Positions 12,274 through 21,559 of a stretch of DNA of 64,000 nt are shown here, piece by piece. The notes beneath the pieces are model-generated. The model searched no databases and had not been told where the DNA came from. It saw only the letters and a list, made by a program, of their open reading frames with translations. The DNA lies in assembly GCF_033153115.1 (NCBI RefSeq), contig NW_026889758.1, positions 24,304,001 to 24,368,000 of the forward strand. Reading direction: 5' to 3'. Source of the stretch: Saccostrea echinata. Lineage: Eukaryota. Every line of letters begins with the position of its first letter. Positions within the stretch are counted from its first letter, which is position 1. The position numbers and the translations under genes were made by a program.

Positions 12274-14456
12274 ATGTCTTCTGTGAAACTTCCAACCTGG
12301 GAGTTGAATTGTGGTTTCAATCCTCTGAATGTGAAGATAAGGGAACAACCAGTATGGATTACACTTGAAGGAGGAATCCCTTTGCCTGCAACCCATTTAC
12401 CTCAGGCAGAGGAAGTAATCAGTGGTGACTTACAATGTGATGTTAGCTCTTTGCCATTAAGGGATCCAAGTAATTTTGTTTCTGGTCAAATTCATTCTTC
12501 AGTATCAGAATGGGAGTCAATTATTGATAAAAATGTATCAAGTAATGATAATATTCTTAGGTGGATAAAAAATGGTGTTAGTATTTTTGAGTTTTTTCAA
12601 GCATACAAAGGAAATTTTAAGGGAAAGTATTATAATTCAGACATGCCTCCCAAACAGTATTTTGTTAATTCTAGTATTTGTCAACAATATTCTGAATTTA
12701 TTGCCAGAGAACTTACAGGCAAGATTCAGTGTGGAGCAGTAAAACTTTTAGGTAGGCTCGGAGAGTGTCAGCCCCCAAGGGTGGTTATGCCCCTTACTGT
12801 AGAGCCGAATAAACCTCGTCTGTGTCAAGATGAGCGATTTATTAATTTGTGGATTAAAGATCTGCCTTTTCGGTAAGAAACACTAAGAGATATTCATCGA
12901 TTGGTAGATAGGAATGCTTTGTTAGTTACATGTGATGAGAAATCTGGTTATAGCCATGTTAAAATTGATAAGCAATCTCAGGGATTTTTTGGTATTCAGT
13001 TTGGTGGATTTTATATGGTGTACACAACATTACCCTTTGGCTGGAAGGCTTCAGCATTTATATATCAGTCGATAGGTATGTGTGTTACTTCTTATCTCAG
13101 GAAACTTTCTGTTTGCAATTCTTTATATATTGATGACAGGTTTGTTGCTACTAGGGGAGCTGATTCTGTAGATGAGGTTACAATTAAGGACGAAGCTAAG
13201 AGGCTTGTGTATAGTTTACTTGAATTACTGACAAGGTTAGGATACACTCTGGCTTTAAGTAAATGTTCCTTGAAACCTTCAAATCGTAAGAGATTTTTGG
13301 GATTTTTAGTTGATTCTGTTCAGGAGGCATACATATTACCAGAGGATAAAAAAGCAAGTTTCATAGAGCTTAGAGAATTCATTCTAAGTAAAGAGGAAGT
13401 TGATGTTAGGACATTACAAAGGTTTGCAGGAATGTGTATCTCAATGAGTTTAGTGATTCCAGGTTGCAAATTATTTTGTCGAGAAGTAAATGCTGGAGTA
13501 TCTCTATGTTTAAAAAATAGTAGGTCTATTAAACTTTCGGGGTCTTTGAAGGAGGAACTTGAGCACTGAAAGTTTTTAGATAGATGGCAGGGTTGTTCTA
13601 GATGGCGACCAGAATTTCCTAAAAGAGTTTCAATTTACACAGATTCTTCAGGTTTCAGGTATGGTGCCTTTGTAGAGCTAGGGAAGGAAGATATAATCTT
13701 AGGGGATTATTGGTTAGAAAATGATGACAGGCCAATACATGTTAAGAAGGCATATGCAGTTTTGAAATCTGTGGTGTCACTTGGGGGTATGATTCAAGAT
13801 TCAAGGGTGGATGTGTTTACGGATAGCTTGGCTGTTATTGGTTGTGGAATAGTCAAGGTGGCAAATGTAAACAACTTAATGATGTTATAAAAGATATTTT
13901 TCAGTTTGTTTGTACAAAAAATATCGATTTAAGGTTAACTTTTGTGTCATCTGAGTTGAATGAGGCAGATAAACCCTCTAGGATTTTAAGTGCTGCTGAC
14001 ACTATGTTAAGTGAGAGGTCATGGGTTCTGGTTGATACTACATATGGTCCACATTCTATAGATTTGATGTCGTTGGATTCGAATGTAATGAGGTCAAAGG
14101 AGGGCGTACCGCTAAAGCATTTTACACCCTGGGCAACCCCTCTTTCGGCGGGAATTAATATTTTCTGTCAGGACATAAGAAAGGAGGTTAACCCTTATAT
14201 TTTTCCTCCTTTTGGGATCATTTTTCCAGTGATTTCTTTACTTGAGCAACAAAAAGTGACCTGTACTATTATAGTTCCTATGATGGAGCCTTTACCCATG
14301 TGGTGGCCAAAGTTGCTAGCTAATTGAGTAGGATCATTTTGTCTTGGTGTAAAGGGTGAAAAAGGAGTTGTCAGTATTCCTACTAAGAAGGGTTTTGTGT
14401 TGGATAGTGTTGGTTTGAGATGGCCTTTGTTTGCTTTCAGAGTTTTATTTGTGTGA
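12274..14456 (+). pseudogene. Pol of the PAT-like element: reverse transcriptase, RNase H, DIRS-type adenine methyltransferase-like domain
   Basis: RT motifs CDEKSGYSH, LPFGW, YIDD, FLG. RNase H YTDSS, FTDS, NEADKPSR. MT-like IDLMSLDSN...YIFPPF. Stops at 12874, 13567 and 14325, frameshift near 13840. Confidence 0.9.
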
Positions 14457-14482
14457 AATATTTTCACACTTGTATATTGCAG

Positions 14483-15693
14483 GGAAAACAAGGAGGGATT
14501 GAGATTGACTGGGAAGTAATAGATAGGAGGCTTTCAGATCTGGATGAGAAAGTAGTTTCGTCAGTAAGGTACAAAAAGAAAACAGTCTTGGATTCATTCA
14601 TGACTTTTTTAAGAGCATCCCCAGAGTCATCAACTTTAGTGTCATGCACCCCTAATGATATTCGTCGATTCTGAGTTTGGAAAGATTTGAAGGGGAAGAC
14701 TATAGTCCATGCTATTGACTGTGAGAAGTTAGGTTTCAAAGGTATTTCTGATTGCGGATGTCCGAAACGGCTTGCTTCAGGTACAGTGGAAGGTTTAATT
14801 CAACAGTTGATTAATATATTTGATGATTATGGTTGTGGTAGAGTATGGGATGTCGTATCTAGAACTGGGAACCCGGCAGCATCCCCTTTGGTGAAAGAGT
14901 ACCTTAAACTGATAAGGGAAGAGCAAGCTAAGGTTCATGTATTGCCTAAGCAGGCTAAACCAATTTTCTTATCTAAAGTCAGAGCAATTGCTTTGTTTAT
15001 AGGTAGGGAATTAGGCAGATCCGATTTGTCACTTAGAGAGAGGTTCGTTTTGGCTAGGGATCAGGCATGGATTAAGGTTCAATTTTTTGCAGGTGATAGG
15101 GCAAGCGATTTATCTTTAGTGGTTTCTCAGGAAGTGAAGATTTTAGAGGATGGTTCAGGTTTGGTATTCCAGCATACTTTCGGTAAAACTTTAAGGGGTG
15201 AGAAGGGTAAGAACAATTATTTTGTAATTAAAAGATGTGAAGACCAAGTGCTTTGCCCAGTCAAAGGTCTGTTGGATTATTTCTTATTTGCCAAAAAATT
15301 GAAGGTTGATTTGTCCAAGGGATATTTGTTCAGGATAGTGTCAGAAAACGGAATGGTTTTGGATAAAAACATTAGTTATTCTGTGGTTTATGACAGGCTG
15401 TTATACTATCTCTCTACGTTAGGCATTTACGAGGGTGAGACGCCACACAGCTTCAGATCTGGTTGTGCAATTACAATGGCTTTATCTGGCTCAGCTGACA
15501 ATGCAGATCAAGTGATGAGACATATAGGTTGGTTTGGCAAATCAAGTGCGGAGTATATAGTAGAATGCATACTATGATTGATTCAGGTATTGTTGCATCA
15601 AAATTGGCGGAGTCTGTTTCTCAAGGAGATATTATTGAATCAGATTATAAGGGAAAGGCGGACTATACTTATTTAGGGAAAGCATTTATTTAG
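14483..15693 (+). pseudogene. Tyrosine recombinase of the PAT-like element
   Basis: Catalytic motifs GDRASDL, TPHSFRSG, HIGW, AEY. In-frame stop at 14672 and frameshift near 15556. Preceded by acceptor tatattgcag. Confidence 0.9.
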
Positions 15694-16825
15694 CTTGGAA
15701 TTTGTGATTTCCTGTAGAAGTCATATTTATATAGGTGCAGAATACCATTGTTAATATATTCATTAAAATAAATGGCAATATATTTTTCAGTGTATGAGTT
15801 GACTTCTTCATGAAGATCGTTTAGATTGAATACTTTCAGATGTATCCTAATTATATATATGTGTGAATTTTTGTTAGAATCATATATATGATCTATTGTC
15901 ATAATTTTGGTGGAAATGAAAGGTTCATTCTCTATAAGGCCGTTTTCCGGCCTACGTTGAAATCATTCTAAAATGTGTTTTTATGTTATTTTTATCCTTC
16001 TATTATATGATTTTGGTCCTTATTTTCCAACATCGATCGTGTGAGTCACGTGATTTATAAAATAAAAATGGCGGCCAAGCTTAAAAATATTGAGGGTATG
16101 TCTATTTAAACTTTGTTTTTATGCATGGTTTTTGAAATAATGTAGAATAAGTCATATAAATATGAAGTAAATAAATTATATTAAAAATTTAAATGTAAAA
16201 CTCGTACAAATTAAGGTTAAAATTAAAATAACATGACGCAACATGTTGCCCATTCACATTTTGTATATTTTAAATTTAAATCTTTAGAAAATGCTCACCT
16301 TATGACATGAGTAAATCTTTTATTATCATTTATTTGGCCAAAATACTTTATTTTAGAATCAATTGTTATTGTGTGTCATTTTTATCGACACTTTACCTTT
16401 ATTTCCTATAATATGCCAATTTAGAAATATGGTAGCGAATTATCTATTTGTGATTTAGCCAAGAAAACCTGCATTACAGACTATATTTAGACCAACCAAA
16501 TGAGCCATCGGTGTAAAAAAAAAAAAAACAAACAGTTAAAATGTATCTTCTTATGTATATAAAATAAAATAAATTCATTAAAAATGCTTTGTTTTCATTT
16601 AAATATACCTGTTAGGTATCATATTAATATCCAATGAATAGGAAATGCTATATGTCTTAAGTATATGTATTAAACGGGATAATAAAAGTTCTGAAAACGG
16701 ATCAAAATCACGTATCTAATAAATAATAATAATAAAAAAAACATTACCGGGTAAGTTCATACTTAATTCACAAAGGAACTAAAATGTCGGTATGTTGTGA
16801 TCCAAATTTGACTAAATAAATACAT

Positions 16826-18883
16826 TTACTCTGACCCTACTCCAGACAACCAGTCACAATCCGCTGCGTCTTTTGTATAATCAAAAAAGGGTCGTGGTAC
16901 CAACTTACCATCTTGATGTCGCTGGAAAGACAAATACCATAGCACAGCAGCAATATGTGCACAGCAGCCTAATGTGCGAGCTCCTGATTTACACTGACAA
17001 TACCAGCCTGTTATTGGATTTCTTTTCTCACTATCATATGAAATCCACAGTATGTAAGTTTTCGAAGAACTATGTCTTGATTGTAACTTGGCTTTCAATA
17101 GACCATCGTCTTGTTTGTGAACAAATAATTCATATTTGCCTTCAGGTGATATATGTTCAATTGTATACGCCTTTGCCTGCTTTAATTGATATACTCCGTC
17201 TGTAATATTTCTAAGAGCATCCTCTGAAAGACGAGGAAAATCCTCCATATCAAATCCATCAACTGACTCCCATACACTTCTTTTAGCTGCAAGTTTTTCA
17301 TTTTCCACCCGTTTTTGTAACTCATTAGTTGTTTTTGACAGAAATGACATTCGAATTGCTAGCTCCGTGTCCTCAAACTCAGAATTTCTTATCGGAGGTC
17401 TGTACTTATTGCACAATGCACATACAATACGTACATAATCACCAACAAATTGTATCTGTGTATTTGGCATCACTTGGCCCAAAGCTTTCCATCGCTTTAT
17501 CCTTCCATTCACTGACTCGACAACCCAACGTACCTTTGTTACCATTCTGGACTCGTTTGCTTCTTCAGTAGAGTGCTGTTTTTTCCCCTTTTCTAAGTAG
17601 CACGGCATCTGAGTTCTAAACCCCATTTGTTGTAAGAAATCTCTGCAGTCTCTAAATCCTCTGTCCAGAACAAATATATCTCCATCTGAAAGCCAAGTTT
17701 TTAATCGTTCAGTGTCATTTTTCATTATACTGGTTAAGATCGAAGCATCATTATTGCGTCCATCTGCTAAGTAAGGACCAATAGCGTCTAGTGTGTAGCA
17801 ATCAGTACCAACTATCATCATTGGCTTCAGGAGCGGTCGACTTTTGTAAGCACTGTATGTTCGGCTCTGGAAACTGTAGTTTGAACTCTTTTCTATATAA
17901 ATGTATGTGCCATCTATGACAAGGGCTGCGACATCTTGGCCATCTGCAAATAGTTGCTTTACAAAAGGAGTAGTGTGTTCCCTAATAAACTCGTCCCTAG
18001 AAATATGCTGAGTGCCCAAATGCTGGGGAACAAATTCTTTCATTAGAACAGCTCTTGCACTGTGGATTGCTTTTGATATGTACTGTACATTAGGTATCTG
18101 GAACATACTGCTCATCACTTTTAGGGACACTCCTGTTCGCAGTTTTGTCAACAGGAGTCCTAAACATGTCCTAGTTGATCTGACTGATGTGTTTCTCAAA
18201 GATTGAAGATATGTTACTAAATTGTCAAATTGCTGTTTAGTGAGACCTGTCAAGTGAATATAATCAGTGTCTGATAATCCAAGAGGGTTATCAAATTCGA
18301 TTCCTTTCGGCTTGTTCAACACATTCATGCGAACATTGTGAAGCAACGTCATTAAATCTGTTCTGTTGAACATGGTGTGGTCTGTCACCTTCGAAAGCAT
18401 CTTTTTGCATTCTTCTTTTAACCCACCCTCACTAAAATGTTTCTGACAACACCTGGTACCTTCAGGTATGATTGTACCAGTTTCTATGAAAAATTTTGTC
18501 CTTGTGTCTTCATTTATTACGACAAGATCTTCCCTCTGAGTACAAAATTGACATTTTGCATGTGAAGACATACTACGAGGGACTTCCAACTTAATAACCT
18601 TTGGACTACCAAATGCAAAGGATGAAGAAGTCTGCCCTTCCTCCACGTCAGTATCATTCTCTTCGCTTTCATTCATATTTCTTTTTTTGAGGTAATACGT
18701 CATTCGGCATTTATTACATAGTAAGTATCCTGATTCGTCTGTCTGATAATTTATTTTTGACGTGATGTAATCATAGAGTTCTTTGTTGATAGTCTCTTTG
18801 ATATATCTCGAACCTGATAAACTACGTTGTCGTAGGTTGCAAATGCAACAGATAGGGTATTGTTGATCTTTACTGGATTCCAT
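16826..18883 (-). CDS. DDE transposase (DDE_Tnp_4-like, with HTH, N-terminal Cys clusters and C-terminal SWIM finger), 685 aa
   Basis: VIDGTYIYIEKS, VLDRGFRD, RWVVESVNGRIK triad. HTH YIHLTGLTKQQFDNL. SWIM CQCKSGARTLGCCAH. Uninterrupted ORF. Confidence 0.93.
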   Translation of the reverse strand: MESSKDQQYPICCICNLRQRSLSGSRYIKETINKELYDYITSKINYQTDESGYLLCNKCRMTYYLKKRNMNESEENDTDVEEGQTSSSFAFGSPKVIKLEVPRSMSSHAKCQFCTQREDLVVINEDTRTKFFIETGTIIPEGTRCCQKHFSEGGLKEECKKMLSKVTDHTMFNRTDLMTLLHNVRMNVLNKPKGIEFDNPLGLSDTDYIHLTGLTKQQFDNLVTYLQSLRNTSVRSTRTCLGLLLTKLRTGVSLKVMSSMFQIPNVQYISKAIHSARAVLMKEFVPQHLGTQHISRDEFIREHTTPFVKQLFADGQDVAALVIDGTYIYIEKSSNYSFQSRTYSAYKSRPLLKPMMIVGTDCYTLDAIGPYLADGRNNDASILTSIMKNDTERLKTWLSDGDIFVLDRGFRDCRDFLQQMGFRTQMPCYLEKGKKQHSTEEANESRMVTKVRWVVESVNGRIKRWKALGQVMPNTQIQFVGDYVRIVCALCNKYRPPIRNSEFEDTELAIRMSFLSKTTNELQKRVENEKLAAKRSVWESVDGFDMEDFPRLSEDALRNITDGVYQLKQAKAYTIEHISPEGKYELFVHKQDDGLLKAKLQSRHSSSKTYILWISYDSEKRNPITGWYCQCKSGARTLGCCAHIAAVLWYLSFQRHQDGKLVPRPFFDYTKDAADCDWLSGVGSE

Positions 18884-19310
18884 AAGTATGAAGAAGGGTA
18901 TTTGCCCCTATTCAGGTCCGGATTGCGTTCTCAGCACGGCTGAGGCAATTAAAGCCAGGACACTGTCCCTCCCGCTCACCGGCACTCCATAGAAACCCGC
19001 AAGATTTTCAACAGCTCCTTCCACTACTCATGTAGAGAGCTTCAGTATGTCTACGATCAAGCAGGTTTCTGCAACTTCCAATAAGGAAGGGCTCCCCTGA
19101 CTTCTGGTTTGCTAAACCAGAGCCGCAGTTCTCAAAGCTTGTATTGCTACCAAAGATGCGTGTTGGCTCCCCAAATCCGCAGATGAAGTTCACCTCAGCA
19201 TCCAGATAACATACAATACTTCGACCCTGTCTCACTCATACGGAGAAAATATGAGCGTCTCTCTGGCAGGTTGGGTCGAGAAATTCCATTATGAAAGATA
19301 TTCTTCATGC
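18884..19310 (-). ncRNA. Candidate large structured RNA (5' leader or ncRNA) abutting the transposase start codon
   Basis: About half G+C in AT-rich surroundings. More than a dozen nested helices found by eye, several with G-U pairs valid only on the minus strand. Family not recognised. Confidence 0.6.
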
Positions 19311-21559
19311 CAGTAACCGTTTTTATCTAAATATCTTTAGTAACACAACGAACATAAATTAACTCATCATCTTTGCACAACCACAAAAAACTTTTTGAGA
19401 ACAAACGGACGTACTTCTAAATAATATATCAAGAGGTATGAAAGAGAAACGAAACAATAAGAATCCGTGCCATATAAGACATTAAAAAAGTACATACATT
19501 TGTCGCTGACAATTCAATCATCATGTGAAAAGCAAGATTTTATTTCATGACACTCAGTCTTTTCAGGCCTTTGATTATATTTTTTTTAAAAAAATAAAAC
19601 TCAACATTTTCTAGTGAAAATTGCATGGCTTATTTTAATTCTTATGGTATCCACAGAAAGTGTCACTCTAACTAAAAAGTAACCAGATAAAATAATCTAC
19701 AAACGCTGATAGCCTCCATAATGAGTAGATACCTTTTCGTCTAATTATTGCTAAAAATAGTGCGTAAAGTTTTTATTAAGATGTCATAACCACCTTTAAC
19801 CAAGTTCATCTTTTTCTAGTGACTTTTTATAGCTTTAAAAAGTTTACATTCAAATTTTGGTGCTGGTTAAAGGTGGTTATGACATGTGTAGGAGTTGTCA
19901 AACACACCAACCCTCTTATGTTTTCCCATTGCGCTAATGTTAATACGGAGCGATGGTACATCACTTTGAGACCCCATATCATAAAAAAATACTAGAGGAT
20001 TAGTAACCAAACAAGTTTTAGCATTAAATTGGATCTTTAGCCCGCTAATTCATACAGTTTTTAAGGGGGAAAATATATTTTGAAATTTTGGAGTCATTGT
20101 AGGCCGGAAAACGGCCTTATAGAGAATGAACCTTTGTTATTCTCATTTGCTTTCTAATAAAAATGGAAATGAATTGTTTTGTATTTAATTTTATTTTGAG
20201 TATTGGGAGAAGAATGTTATATTATTTTGGGTTAACTGAAGGAATGGAGAAGGGTGATTGCAAAAATGCAGAGTTTTTATGCCCAAAACTTAAACATGAT
20301 CTGAATGCTGGAAGATATTAAACACTGAGGATAGGGAAGAGCCTCATTGGTTAAGATCGAAGCGGAAGTACATGTGACGTAGTATTCATTCTTTAGACAT
20401 CCATGCTTGATAGTGGATAATGTGTACCGAAGGAATGATGATAAGTATGATGATGATCAATGAAAGAGGTTTTTTCCACCCACCCATCTTCGGGATGGGA
20501 TTGGGAATATATTTTAGTTTGTGCATCTATATTGAATGTGCATTTTATGTGGTGATGATTTTTCTATGTTAAAATTTACTATAGATGCAGTGTTTGATAT
20601 CATCCTACATTCAGATTTCCATCCTGCAGAGTTTTTATGCCCAAAACTTAAACATGATCTGAATGCTGGAAGATATTAACATGCATTCTCTGTAAGCACC
20701 AAAAAATTTACTATAGGGCTTGGAAACGACATCTCTCCGATTTTGATGAAATTTGCACCATAGGTGCATCTTGGCACAAAACTAGGAAATATGGTGTTAG
20801 AAGTTTCACACGTGCACCCGGTTGCCATGGAGACGGGTCAATTGAATTTGGCCATTTTTGGCCCTTTTTGACCAAATAAAAACATGAAAATTGAGGAAAT
20901 GTAAATGCATTTTTGTCTTTATGTAGTAAACTCAAACACAAATCATTGTATCATAAGAAAACATCAACTTTTAAGGTATACAGGGCATATAATCGGTTAT
21001 TCCAGAATTATTCCCACTCTAAGAAAAAGGTCCTGTAAAATGACATTGTTTCTGAAAATGTGAAAAATGGGAAATTTGGTATTTTTTGAGAACTTTAAGG
21101 TTAAATAAAAAAAATTGTCTACGGAAATTTTTCAAATCTTATGTGTGTTTTATACTTCAGAATTAGGAGTGTCACCTCATGAAAAAATTGGAGTGGGATC
21201 TCAATTCTATTTTTAGTAACATGTATCTATAAATAGACATATTTCAGAAAAATCTAAAAAATCAAATTTGGGCAGAGTTTAAGATGCCATTGGTAGGTAT
21301 TTAAGAAATATACTGTAAAAGTCAATATGTTAATGACAGAAACTGGACACCAATAACTACTATGCATATTATTTGAAGGGAGTTCCGTTTTCTATTTATA
21401 GCTTCAAATGCCTTAAAATAGACTTGTCTCATAATATGTGTAAAAATGACTATTTTCTATCATTTAGAAGCTCCACTAAAACATAAGTGATAAACATACT
21501 GCTATCACCAATATTTCATCAATTAGAACATGGGATAATACAATAACTCACACATTATT

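What the first reader, a model, noticed from the sequence alone, without database searches (positions are those of the whole stretch)
18884..19310. A DNA transposon with a ~420-nt, densely folded, sense-strand RNA directly upstream of its transposase AUG
Seen: this segment is about half G+C inside AT-rich DNA, and on the transposase strand it is almost entirely covered by nested helices. (1) UCGACCC/GGGUCGA (19279-19273 with 19227-19221) encloses CUCAUA/UAUGAG. (2) UGUUAUC/GGUAGCA and GGAUGC/GCAUCU close a junction with hairpins AGGUGA/UCAUCU and UUGG-GGAG-CCAA. (3) A cloverleaf-like four-way junction closed by CUGCGGC/GUUGCAG carries UCUGGUUU-AGC-AAACCAGA (19121-19103), GGG-GAG-CCC and CUUCC-UUAUU-GGAAG. 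(4) A 10-bp long-range helix AGAAACCUGC/GCGGGUUUCU (19070-19061 with 19000-18991) encloses AGCUC/GAGCU. (5) A second multiway junction closed by CCGG/CCGG holds GGGAC-AGU-GUCCU, GGC-UUUAAUU-GCC and CUCAGC-CGU-GCUGAG. (6) A last hairpin UGAA..AGGGG/CCCUU..UUCA ends 5 nt before the AUG. Many helices contain G-U pairs that would be A-C mismatches on the other strand, which points to RNA folding rather than DNA palindromes. GGGAG recurs three times and there are several upstream AUGs. Established: eukaryotic cut-and-paste transposons are normally described as TIRs plus ORFs, and I do not recognise a hammerhead, group I or tRNA consensus here. Inference: an IRES-like or autoregulatory leader, a ribozyme, or a transposase-associated ncRNA, possibly an undescribed RNA component of Spy/ISL2EU-like elements.
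Basis: partly seen in the sequence, partly recalled or inferred. Interest (0 to 1): 0.88.

Follow-up and report, generated by a model that had tools for sequence, protein, structure and literature searches.

The report
Conserved structured leader of oyster Spy transposon
A roughly 400-base non-coding stretch just upstream of the transposase gene of an oyster "Spy" DNA transposon is better conserved than the transposase itself, and two of its hairpins are kept by compensating mutations, so it is probably a regulatory RNA leader, although no transcript has been shown.

Summary
The element at 15922-20132 (- strand) is a Spy-type (PHIS) cut-and-paste transposon. It has 34-bp TIRs, an AAA|TTT insertion site without duplication, and one 685-aa DDE_Tnp_4 ORF. 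The G+C-rich leader (18884-~19320) is real.

The leader is the only non-coding part that aligns between two autonomous clades in this genome. Their transposases are 38-53% identical. The leader is 70-75% identical overall and 90-100% over its last ~105 nt. It has no ORF, Rfam or tRNA match.

- Hairpin D2 (19229-19126) is kept by compensatory changes (38 cells against 11±5 expected, p≤0.0002). It is far more stable on the sense strand (-35 against -12 kcal/mol).
- Hairpin D4 (19070-18991) has moderate support (p≈0.01).
- The "cloverleaf" and several other helices are private to this family.
- The 3' block D5 is conserved in sequence without covariation.

The D2 fold is not kept in one non-autonomous family and only weakly in the other. 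Spy relatives from metagenomes have no such leader.

Three poly(A) RNA-seq runs show no expression, so no transcript start is known. My best reading (0.4) is a cis-acting leader of the transposase mRNA that controls its expression. Promoter, DNA cis-element and separate-RNA readings remain open.

The parts
15922..20132 (-). Complete Spy-type (PHIS superfamily) DNA transposon, 4.2 kb, inserted between AAA and TTT without target-site duplication
   Evidence: TIR arms 15919-15960 / 20094-20135 are 95% complementary. Near-identical copies L001, L003, L004 lose similarity to the window beyond this 5' end, and the non-autonomous copies beyond the 3' end near 15919.
15922..15955 (.). 3' terminal inverted repeat (34 bp; GGTTCATTCTCTATAAGGCCGTTTTCCGGCCTAC read on the + strand)
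20099..20132 (.). 5' terminal inverted repeat (34 bp)
16826..18883 (-). Transposase ORF, 685 aa: N-terminal Cys-rich region, DDE_Tnp_4 core, C-terminal SWIM-like zinc finger
   Evidence: Pfam PF13359 E 3.5e-20; SWIM E 0.0056, below the cutoff. 265 homologues at E<=1e-10; most named ones are bivalve, a few insect. The best is 91% identical and labelled Saccostrea echinata.
19311..20098 (-). AT-rich 5' subterminal region (GC 0.31). It is not alignable between clades A and B. It contains a perfect 22-nt inverted repeat at 19781-19802 / 19864-19885.
18884..19320 (-). Conserved G+C-rich leader (the finding). Conservation with clade B starts at about 19320 and is solid from 19281.
19233..19257 (-). 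D1 hairpin CGCUCAUAU/GUAUGAGUG. The sequence is conserved; covariation is marginal (p_comp 0.055).
19126..19229 (-). D2: ~105-nt long irregular hairpin. It has an outer helix 19224-19218/19138-19132, then helices 2a (19211-19205/19151-19145) and 2b (19203-19196/19162-19154), and a variable apical part that is deleted in L008. This is the best-supported structure.
   Evidence: Compensatory cells 38 against 11±5, non-canonical cells 18 against 67±8, p<=0.0002. Sense MFE -35.3 (z -3.5) against antisense -12.2 (z +1.1).
19076..19125 (-). It is moderately conserved in sequence but has no compensatory change. Helices 3b and 3c are broken in clade B.
18991..19070 (-). D4: 80-nt hairpin closed by AGAAACCUGC/GCGGGUUUCU, with compensatory G-C>A-U and U-A>C-G changes in clade B. 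The stem is longer in B.
   Evidence: p_comp 0.009, p_non 0.028. Sense MFE is 6-11 kcal/mol lower than antisense in all 5 autonomous lineages. RNAalifold gives -22.5 kcal/mol and 25 pairs.
18886..18985 (-). D5: the most conserved block, 90-100% identical between clades A and B. It includes the invariant hairpin AUUGCCUCAGC-CGU-GCUGAG-AAC-GCAAU (18949-18922). It is the only leader part kept in lineage H (L041, L066). It shows no covariation.
   Evidence: The covariance model R1 also finds >=110 further D5-like copies in the genome.

Best explanation
The segment is the conserved 5' leader of an oyster-specific lineage of Spy DNA transposons. I read it as part of the transposase mRNA that acts in cis on transposase expression.

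Two long hairpins (D2, D4) and an almost invariant ~100-nt block next to the AUG (D5) would form a platform for host factors. That platform would set how, or how much, the transposase is translated. The leader carries 6-11 upstream AUGs, so ribosomes would either bypass it (IRES- or shunt-like) or be held back by it to throttle expression.

Shown:
- Selective conservation of the leader above that of the coding sequence.
- Compensatory maintenance of D2, and more weakly D4, between the two autonomous clades.
- A sense-strand energy advantage.
- Loss of the D2 fold in non-autonomous family G and only weak retention in family F.

Inferred:
- That the leader is transcribed with the ORF.
- That the effect is on translation.
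- That D5 binds a host factor.
For: (1) Conservation above the coding sequence.
- Clade A (the window family) and clade B (L008, L009, L011, L012) transposases are 38-53% identical in amino acids.
- At the DNA level only 230-435 nt of the DDE core aligns, at 64-67%.
- The whole ~390-nt leader aligns at 70-75%. Positions 19076-18897 are 80-100% identical.
- TIRs and subterminal regions do not align.

(2) Not coding. No frame is open, and stop codons sit at conserved positions.

(3) Structure kept by substitutions.
- With a structure predicted from the window sequence alone, substitutions in clade B give 54 compensatory cells against 18±6 expected. Non-canonical cells are 121 against 184±11 (p<=0.0002).
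- With one B consensus, there are 15 compensatory pairs against 3.5-4.4±1.8 expected.
- The result is robust to local permutation.
- A negative control of equal divergence is not significant.

(4) The signal localises to D2 (p<=0.0002) and D4 (p about 0.01).

(5) Sense strand favoured.
- The whole-leader antisense test gives p about 0.08.
- D2 is -35.3 kcal/mol on the sense strand against -12.2 on the antisense.
- D4 is more stable on the sense strand in 5 of 5 autonomous lineages.

(6) The D2 fold is not kept in non-autonomous family G (p 0.24/0.45) and only weakly in family F (p 0.014/0.09). RNAalifold finds no consensus once these copies are included. This fits a role tied to transposase expression rather than to DNA mobilisation.

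(7) Upstream AUGs are not depleted, as in leaders that are not simply scanned.

(8) A 229-nt contig from a random-primed metatranscriptome covers 18890-19115, while the CDS has no coverage. This is weak evidence.
Against: - No transcript evidence. Three oligo-dT RNA-seq runs (about 35 million reads read) put at most 5 partial reads on the whole element, so the transcript start is unknown.
- Single transitions from Watson-Crick pairs go to G-U (35) no more often than to A-C (31), so that strand test is neutral.
- L011 and L012 show no folding excess.
- D3 and D5 show no covariation.
- There are only two independent autonomous clades, both from one genome.
- RNAalifold proposes a different inner pairing for D2 on the MAFFT alignment.
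- The leader is absent from other Spy relatives, so it is not needed for Spy biology in general.
- D5-like copies occur >=110 times elsewhere in the genome, in a context I could not read.
Confidence: 0.4

Rival explanations
1. DNA-level regulatory module. The conserved block, especially D4-D5, would be the internal promoter or enhancer of the transposase gene, bound by conserved host transcription factors. The transcript start would lie in or just after D5, so most of the 'leader' is never in the mRNA.
For: - D5 is almost invariant in sequence and shows no covariation, which is how protein-binding DNA behaves.
- D5 alone is kept in lineage H directly in front of the ATG.
- 6-11 upstream AUGs would be harmless if they are not transcribed.
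- No RNA reads are available to contradict it.
Against: - Compensatory maintenance of D2 and D4, and their sense-strand energy advantage, are not expected for double-stranded promoter DNA.
- There is no CpG-island signature: CpG o/e is 0.58, the same as the CDS.
- About 180 nt of contiguous 80-100% identity is long for a promoter.
- The metatranscriptome contig reaches up to 19115.
Confidence: 0.2
2. Cis-acting DNA needed for transposition itself. The leader would hold internal transposase-binding or architecture sites, like the 'UTR' sequences without which short-TIR Spy donors did not transpose in human cells.
For: - In PMC11304231, donors carrying only the short TIRs (cvSpy, hsSpy, crSpy, ldSpy) were not functional. 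The cvSpy donor with TIR plus UTRs was active.
- Non-autonomous families G and F, and a large unread family, retain pieces of the leader.
Against: - Transposase-DNA recognition co-evolves quickly. Here the TIRs and the N-terminal DNA-binding region have diverged beyond alignment or to about 31-37% identity, while the leader stayed 75-100% identical.
- In family G the leader pieces are no better conserved (72-77%) than the rest of the element (67-75%), and the D2 fold is lost.
- The leader lies about 850 nt inside the element.
- cgSpy needs only its TIRs (PMC11304231).
Confidence: 0.12
3. A separate non-coding RNA. The leader, or its 3' ~230 nt, would accumulate as a stable RNA that acts in trans, for example as a transposase partner or as a hairpin precursor of small RNAs.
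For: - The only RNA-library contig on the element covers just 18890-19115, and the CDS has no coverage.
- D2 and D4 are long hairpins.
- D5-like modules are dispersed in >=110 copies.
Against: - No leader segment is complementary to the element ends beyond chance: the longest match is 7-8 nt and the null mean is 7.2.
- Spy transposases expressed from the ORF alone transpose in human cells (PMC11304231).
- There is no Rfam family match.
- No conserved Pol III-type terminator follows D5 (alignment).
- The single contig may be DNA carry-over.
Confidence: 0.1
4. No function. The similarity would reflect a module exchanged by recombination or gene conversion between co-resident Spy families, and the helices would be chance.
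For: - The identity profile is mosaic: 53-63% in D2 against 90-100% in D5.
- Both clades live in the same genome.
- The L011 and L012 leaders do not fold better than shuffles.
Against: - The least conserved part (D2) carries the strongest excess of compensatory changes, the opposite of neutral decay.
- The permutation control on neutral element DNA of the same divergence is flat.
- D5 differs less than the CDS between clade B, lineage H and clade A: 84-88% against 73-80%.
Confidence: 0.1

Closest known systems
Spy transposons of the PHIS superfamily (Han et al. 2014, PMC4122938; Diaby et al. 2024, PMC11304231, which lists Crgi-Spy from Crassostrea gigas with a 685-aa ORF)
   Same: - Single DDE ORF of about 700 aa.
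- Short TIRs.
- Precise insertion between AAA and TTT without target-site duplication.
- Present in oysters.
   Different: - Text searches of these papers found no mention of a conserved or structured region between TIR and ORF. One only notes that 'UTRs' had to be included in short-TIR donors.
- The window's transposase has an N-terminal Cys-rich region and a weak SWIM match.
IRES-type and other structured 5' leaders of viruses and retrotransposons (picornavirus IRES; leaders of gypsy/Idefix, LINE-1) - named from my own knowledge
   Same: - Several hundred nt long.
- Multiple upstream AUGs.
- Conserved stem-loops kept by covariation.
- A highly conserved block just 5' of the start codon.
   Different: - No sequence or Rfam similarity.
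- The host is a cut-and-paste DNA transposon.
- Cap-independent translation is untested.
- Only two domains have covariation support.
Bacterial insertion-sequence 5'UTR regulators (e.g. ISPpu9, PMC8450116; IS10 and IS200 from my own knowledge)
   Same: mRNA leader structure limits or tunes transposase translation. The element is also of the IS5/PIF-related DDE kind.
   Different: Those are prokaryotic mechanisms (RBS occlusion, antisense sRNAs, Hfq). There is no homology.
RNA-guided mobile-element enzymes with element-encoded ncRNA (IS110 bridge RNA, TnpB/Fanzor omega-RNA) - named from my own knowledge
   Same: A conserved structured non-coding module sits next to the mobility gene.
   Different: - Those RNAs abut an element end and carry guide segments matching the ends or the target. 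Here the leader is about 850 nt internal and shows no such complementarity.
- The enzyme is a DDE transposase that works without it in published Spy assays.

Membership tests
Spy group, PHIS superfamily of DNA transposons | Transposase with an IS5/PIF-type DDE domain as the single long ORF | tested here: met
   PF13359 DDE_Tnp_4, E 3.5e-20. The other ORFs inside the element are <=110 aa and lie on the opposite strand or within the leader; they were not searched for domains.
Spy group, PHIS superfamily of DNA transposons | Terminal inverted repeats | tested here: met
   34-bp TIRs within 42-nt arms that are 95% complementary.
Spy group, PHIS superfamily of DNA transposons | Insertion between AAA and TTT with no target-site duplication | tested here: met
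   The window flanks read AAA|element|TTT. Alignments to other copies run about 3 nt past the TIR, as expected if they share AAA/TTT flanks. No empty site was examined.
Spy group, PHIS superfamily of DNA transposons | Phylogenetic placement of the transposase inside the Spy clade | not tested
   No tree with reference Spy, ISL2EU and Harbinger transposases was built. The only link is the same ORF length (685 aa) as the published Crgi-Spy.
Known RNA families (Rfam 15), including ribozymes, IRES families and small RNAs | Covariance-model match at or near the gathering score | tested here: not met
   No hit inside 18884-19310 at E<=10. ARAGORN finds no tRNA.
IRES / cap-independent translation element | Lies inside the mRNA, upstream of the initiating AUG | tested here: inconclusive
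   The position is right, but no transcript start could be mapped: RNA-seq runs are silent on the element.
IRES / cap-independent translation element | Evolutionarily conserved higher-order RNA structure | tested here: inconclusive
   D2 is strongly supported and D4 moderately. D3 and D5 are not.
IRES / cap-independent translation element | Drives translation of a downstream cistron independently of the cap | not testable with these tools
   Needs a bicistronic or circular-RNA reporter.
Element-encoded guide RNA (bridge RNA / omega-RNA type) | Segments complementary to the element ends or the target | tested here: not met
   The longest exact match to either end is 7-8 nt, equal to the shuffle expectation.
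Element-encoded guide RNA (bridge RNA / omega-RNA type) | RNA required for the enzyme's activity | not testable with these tools
   Published Spy assays use the ORF alone in trans (PMC11304231). That speaks against this reading, but this family was not assayed.
Captured coding exon | An open frame, or codon-like conservation, shared by the homologues | tested here: not met
   All six frames are closed in all five lineages, and stops sit at conserved positions.

The most novel reading that the evidence does not exclude
The leader is a functional RNA module of a eukaryotic cut-and-paste DNA transposon. It would be either a true cap-independent (IRES- or shunt-type) translation element, or a stable transposase-associated RNA. 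Its host-factor platform (D5) would also be spread through the genome on more than 100 non-autonomous copies.
Probability: 0.25. Interest if true: 0.8.

Novelty: new variant of a known kind. Interest (0 to 1): 0.55.

Why it matters
Eukaryotic DDE transposons are usually described as TIRs plus an ORF, and how they set their own transposase dose is poorly understood.

Here a non-coding module is held more constant than the enzyme, and part of it is held at the level of base-pairing. That points to an expression-control layer that depends on host machinery.

Oyster Spy transposases are already being developed as gene-transfer tools, and short-TIR Spy donors needed the 'UTR' (PMC11304231). Knowing what this region does therefore has practical value. 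It also offers a compact, testable case of RNA-structure selection in a DNA transposon.

Tried and rejected
- Coding exon or conserved upstream ORF: no shared open frame. Upstream AUG number equals chance.
- tRNA- or SINE-head-like 'cloverleaf': ARAGORN finds nothing, and the junction helices are not conserved.
- Known RNA family or ribozyme: no Rfam match in the segment.
- Guide-RNA idea: no complementarity to the element ends.
- CpG-island promoter: CpG o/e is 0.58, the same as the CDS.
- General Spy feature:
  - No leader homologue in 80 metagenome loci encoding relatives.
  - Their upstream regions are AT-rich and do not fold better than shuffles. L075 is the exception and folds on both strands, probably because of inverted repeats. 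The run timed out after 10 of 12 loci.
  - A degenerate D5 pattern found nothing in metagenome, genome or viral contigs.
  - A protein scan of genome contigs found nothing.
- Expression: X1-X3 show no coverage. X5 gives one 229-nt contig only.
- RNAalifold on 30 D2 sequences, mostly non-autonomous copies: zero pairs.
- Alignment-shuffle z-score of the five-sequence alignment: about -3.8 on both strands, so it does not discriminate between strands.
- G-U against A-C transition test: no bias, 35 against 31.
This is why I moved to the permutation test.
- Literature: no paper found on structured leaders of eukaryotic DNA transposons, and none holding the longer (15-16 nt) leader motifs searched.

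Tools that were not available:
I therefore did not fetch the other Spy families of this genome, the lineage at G000:C54:42495006-42496024, or the >=110 D5-like copies.
- Two of my fold scripts hit time limits. L012 and L052 whole-leader z-scores are missing.

Full report
**What the element is.**
- The window lies at G000:C9:24304001-24368000 in a 923-Mb eukaryote genome.
- The best protein hit, 91% identical, is labelled Saccostrea echinata. Most named homologues are from bivalves and a few from insects.
- The ORF at 16826-18883 (- strand, 685 aa) has a DDE_Tnp_4 core (E 3.5e-20) and a weak SWIM match.
- The element is bounded by 34-bp inverted repeats, within arms 15919-15960 and 20094-20135. 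It sits between AAA and TTT with no duplication.
- This is the signature of Spy elements of the PHIS superfamily (PMC4122938, PMC11304231). Crgi-Spy from Crassostrea gigas also has a 685-aa ORF.
- Another reader of this scan noted Spy-like elements elsewhere in this genome.

**The observation.**
- The segment has GC 0.48, against 0.31, 0.39 and 0.25 around it. It abuts the ATG.
- On the transposase strand it folds to -146.5 kcal/mol (z -2.6). The opposite strand has z -0.64.
However, a sequence of this size has 471 chance stems of >=5 bp, so a list of helices proves nothing by itself.
- There is no Rfam match in the segment, no tRNA and no open frame. Stop codons sit at conserved positions in the homologues.

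**Relatives inside the genome**.
- Clade A is the window family. It has 5-8 copies at 93-100% identity with intact ORFs.
- Clade B is four single, decayed autonomous copies: L008, L009, L011, L012.
- Lineage H (L041, L066) consists of B relatives that keep only the last ~75 nt before the ATG.
- Two non-autonomous groups keep pieces of the leader. Group G (L013-L030) is related to A. Group F is L052-L071.
- A and B transposases share 38-53% of residues.
- At the DNA level only 230-435 nt of the catalytic core aligns, at 64-67%, and the ends do not align at all. The whole leader aligns at 70-75%.
- Along the leader, identity between A and the B consensus is 53-63% in D2, 80-90% from 19076 to 18987, and 90-100% from 19001 to 18897.
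- The leader is therefore the most conserved part of these elements.

**Is the conservation structural?**
- Method:
  - I predicted a structure from the window sequence alone.
  - I then asked whether the substitutions seen in other lineages preserve its pairs.
  - The comparison set was permutations that swap whole alignment columns among paired columns carrying the same window base.
  - This keeps the window structure, the relatedness of the sequences and the substitution spectrum.
- Whole leader:
  - Clade B shows 54 compensatory cells against 18±6 expected.
  - Non-canonical cells are 121 against 184±11 expected (p<=0.0002).
  - With one B consensus there are 15 compensatory pairs against about 4±1.8 expected.
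  - Restricting swaps to 30-100-nt neighbourhoods changes nothing.
- The same test on the antisense structure gives p about 0.08.
- A negative control is flat. It used the AT-rich 5' region compared between A and six G copies at the same 72-74% identity.

| Domain | Window coordinates | Result |
|---|---|---|
| D1 | 19285-19230 | Marginal, p_comp 0.055 |
| D2 | 19232-19123 | 38 compensatory cells against 11±5; 18 non-canonical against 67±8; p<=0.0002 |
| D3 (the 'cloverleaf') | 19128-19069 | No compensatory change |
| D4 | 19078-18984 | p_comp 0.009, p_non 0.028 |
| D5 | 18985-18886 | No compensatory change |

- D2 folds to -35.3 kcal/mol (z -3.5) on the sense strand and -12.2 (z +1.1) on the antisense strand in the window.
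- D4 is 6-11 kcal/mol more stable on the sense strand in all five autonomous lineages.
- RNAalifold agrees on the outer D2 helix and on the D4 hairpin. It offers a different inner pairing for D2 on the MAFFT alignment.

**Weak points.**
- The L011 and L012 leaders do not fold better than shuffles.
- Transitions from Watson-Crick pairs go to G-U (35) no more than to A-C (31).
- Only two autonomous clades, from one genome, carry the signal.

- Kept, fully or partly: 2a, 2b, 2c, 3a, 4a, 5d, 6b.
- Broken in homologues: 1, 2d, 3b, 3c, the outer part of 4b, 5a, 6a.
It carries two compensatory positions.

**Context that bears on function.**
- The D2 fold is not kept in non-autonomous group G (p 0.24/0.45) and only weakly in F (p 0.014/0.09). 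RNAalifold finds no consensus once those copies dominate. In G the leader pieces are no better conserved than the rest of the element. This ties the constraint to elements that must express a transposase.
- Upstream AUGs (6 in A, 8-11 in B) are as frequent as chance. A scanning ribosome would rarely reach the main AUG.
- D5 is nearly invariant and survives alone in lineage H.
- A covariance model of D5 finds the 12 known leaders, one more leader-plus-transposase lineage (G000:C54:42495207), and >=110 further full-length 98-100-nt hits. Some of these lie in inverted pairs 2.5-3.9 kb apart. I could not read these copies.
- Eighty metagenome loci encoding relatives have no homologous leader. Ten of these with a confident start codon were folded. 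Their upstream regions are AT-rich (GC 0.26-0.37), and all but one fold no better than shuffles. The leader is therefore a lineage-specific acquisition.
- Expression could not be shown. Three oligo-dT runs of the same species label are silent on the element. One random-primed metatranscriptome has a single 229-nt contig on 18890-19115.
- In PMC11304231 the Spy transposase expressed from its ORF alone transposes in human cells, so an obligatory RNA cofactor is unlikely. Short-TIR donors needed the 'UTR' sequences, which keeps a DNA cis role open.
- The leader has no complementarity to the element ends beyond chance.

**Reading.**
- I consider a cis-acting structured leader of the transposase mRNA the most likely reading (0.4). 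D2 and D4 would be maintained RNA hairpins and D5 a host-factor site, together setting translation of the transposase.
- Rivals are an internal promoter or enhancer (0.2), a DNA cis-element for transposition (0.12), a separate RNA (0.1), and a recombined module without function (0.1).

**Novelty.**
- Conserved structured leaders are known for viruses, retrotransposons and bacterial insertion sequences (e.g. PMC8450116).
- My searches found no description of one for a eukaryotic cut-and-paste transposon, nor in the Spy papers.
- I class it as a new variant of a known kind. Interest is moderate: the evidence is computational and comes from one genome.

- Because of these two limits, homologous leaders from other oysters and the D5-like copies were not examined.

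Noticed in passing
G000 genome-wide; coordinates listed (e.g. G000:C50:2661629-2661728 + with 2665452-2665551 -, and C50:2981581-2981681 + with 2984119-2984219 -): A covariance model of the 100 nt before the ATG (D5) finds >=110 additional full-length 98-100-nt hits (35-54 bits). They are not next to transposase matches, and some lie in inverted pairs 2.5-3.9 kb apart. This looks like an unread repeat family that shares the D5 module.
   Followed up: partly
G000:C54:42495006-42496024: A further, more diverged lineage. It has a leader-like match (71% over 199 nt), a D5 model hit at 42495207-42495304, and a transposase N-terminus at 42495767-42496024 (32% identity, 1 stop).
   Followed up: no
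window 19781-19802 / 19864-19885: Perfect 22-nt inverted repeat with a 61-nt spacer in the AT-rich 5' subterminal region. It is also present in the near-identical copies L001-L004, L006, L007 and L010. It has only a sub-threshold miRNA-precursor resemblance (MIR7504, 21.7 bits against a gathering score of 83).
   Followed up: partly
L006 / L010 (G000:C44:4165097-4169250): This family-A copy carries a ~720-nt insertion inside hairpin D2. The window's 19166-19171 is present on both sides of it, suggesting a 6-bp duplication, so another element probably landed in the leader.
   Followed up: no
L007 (G000:C54:61000306-61003552): Internal-deletion derivative of the window family. It joins window 19064 to 17622, which removes D4, D5 and the first ~420 codons.
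   Followed up: no
L041 and L066 (G000:C12:11221279-11235768): Two decayed clade-B-like elements 14 kb apart. They keep only the last ~75 nt of the leader (84-88% identical to the window) in front of the ATG. Upstream of that is unrelated AT-rich DNA.
   Followed up: partly
window 13842-15577 (+): ORFs of another mobile element end about 350 bp from the Spy 3' TIR. One ORF of 296 aa has an ALOG domain (PF04852, E 3.3e-10).
   Followed up: no
protein P0107: A 431-aa relative (54% identical) is filed as a transposase of the bacterial MAG 'Candidatus Thiodiazotropha endolucinida', a clam symbiont. It is most likely host (bivalve) DNA binned with the symbiont.
   Followed up: no
window 18890-19115: In run X5 (random-primed metatranscriptome) the only sizeable contig on the element is 229 nt, 96% identical, and confined to the conserved 3' half of the leader. 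The transposase CDS has zero coverage.
   Followed up: partly
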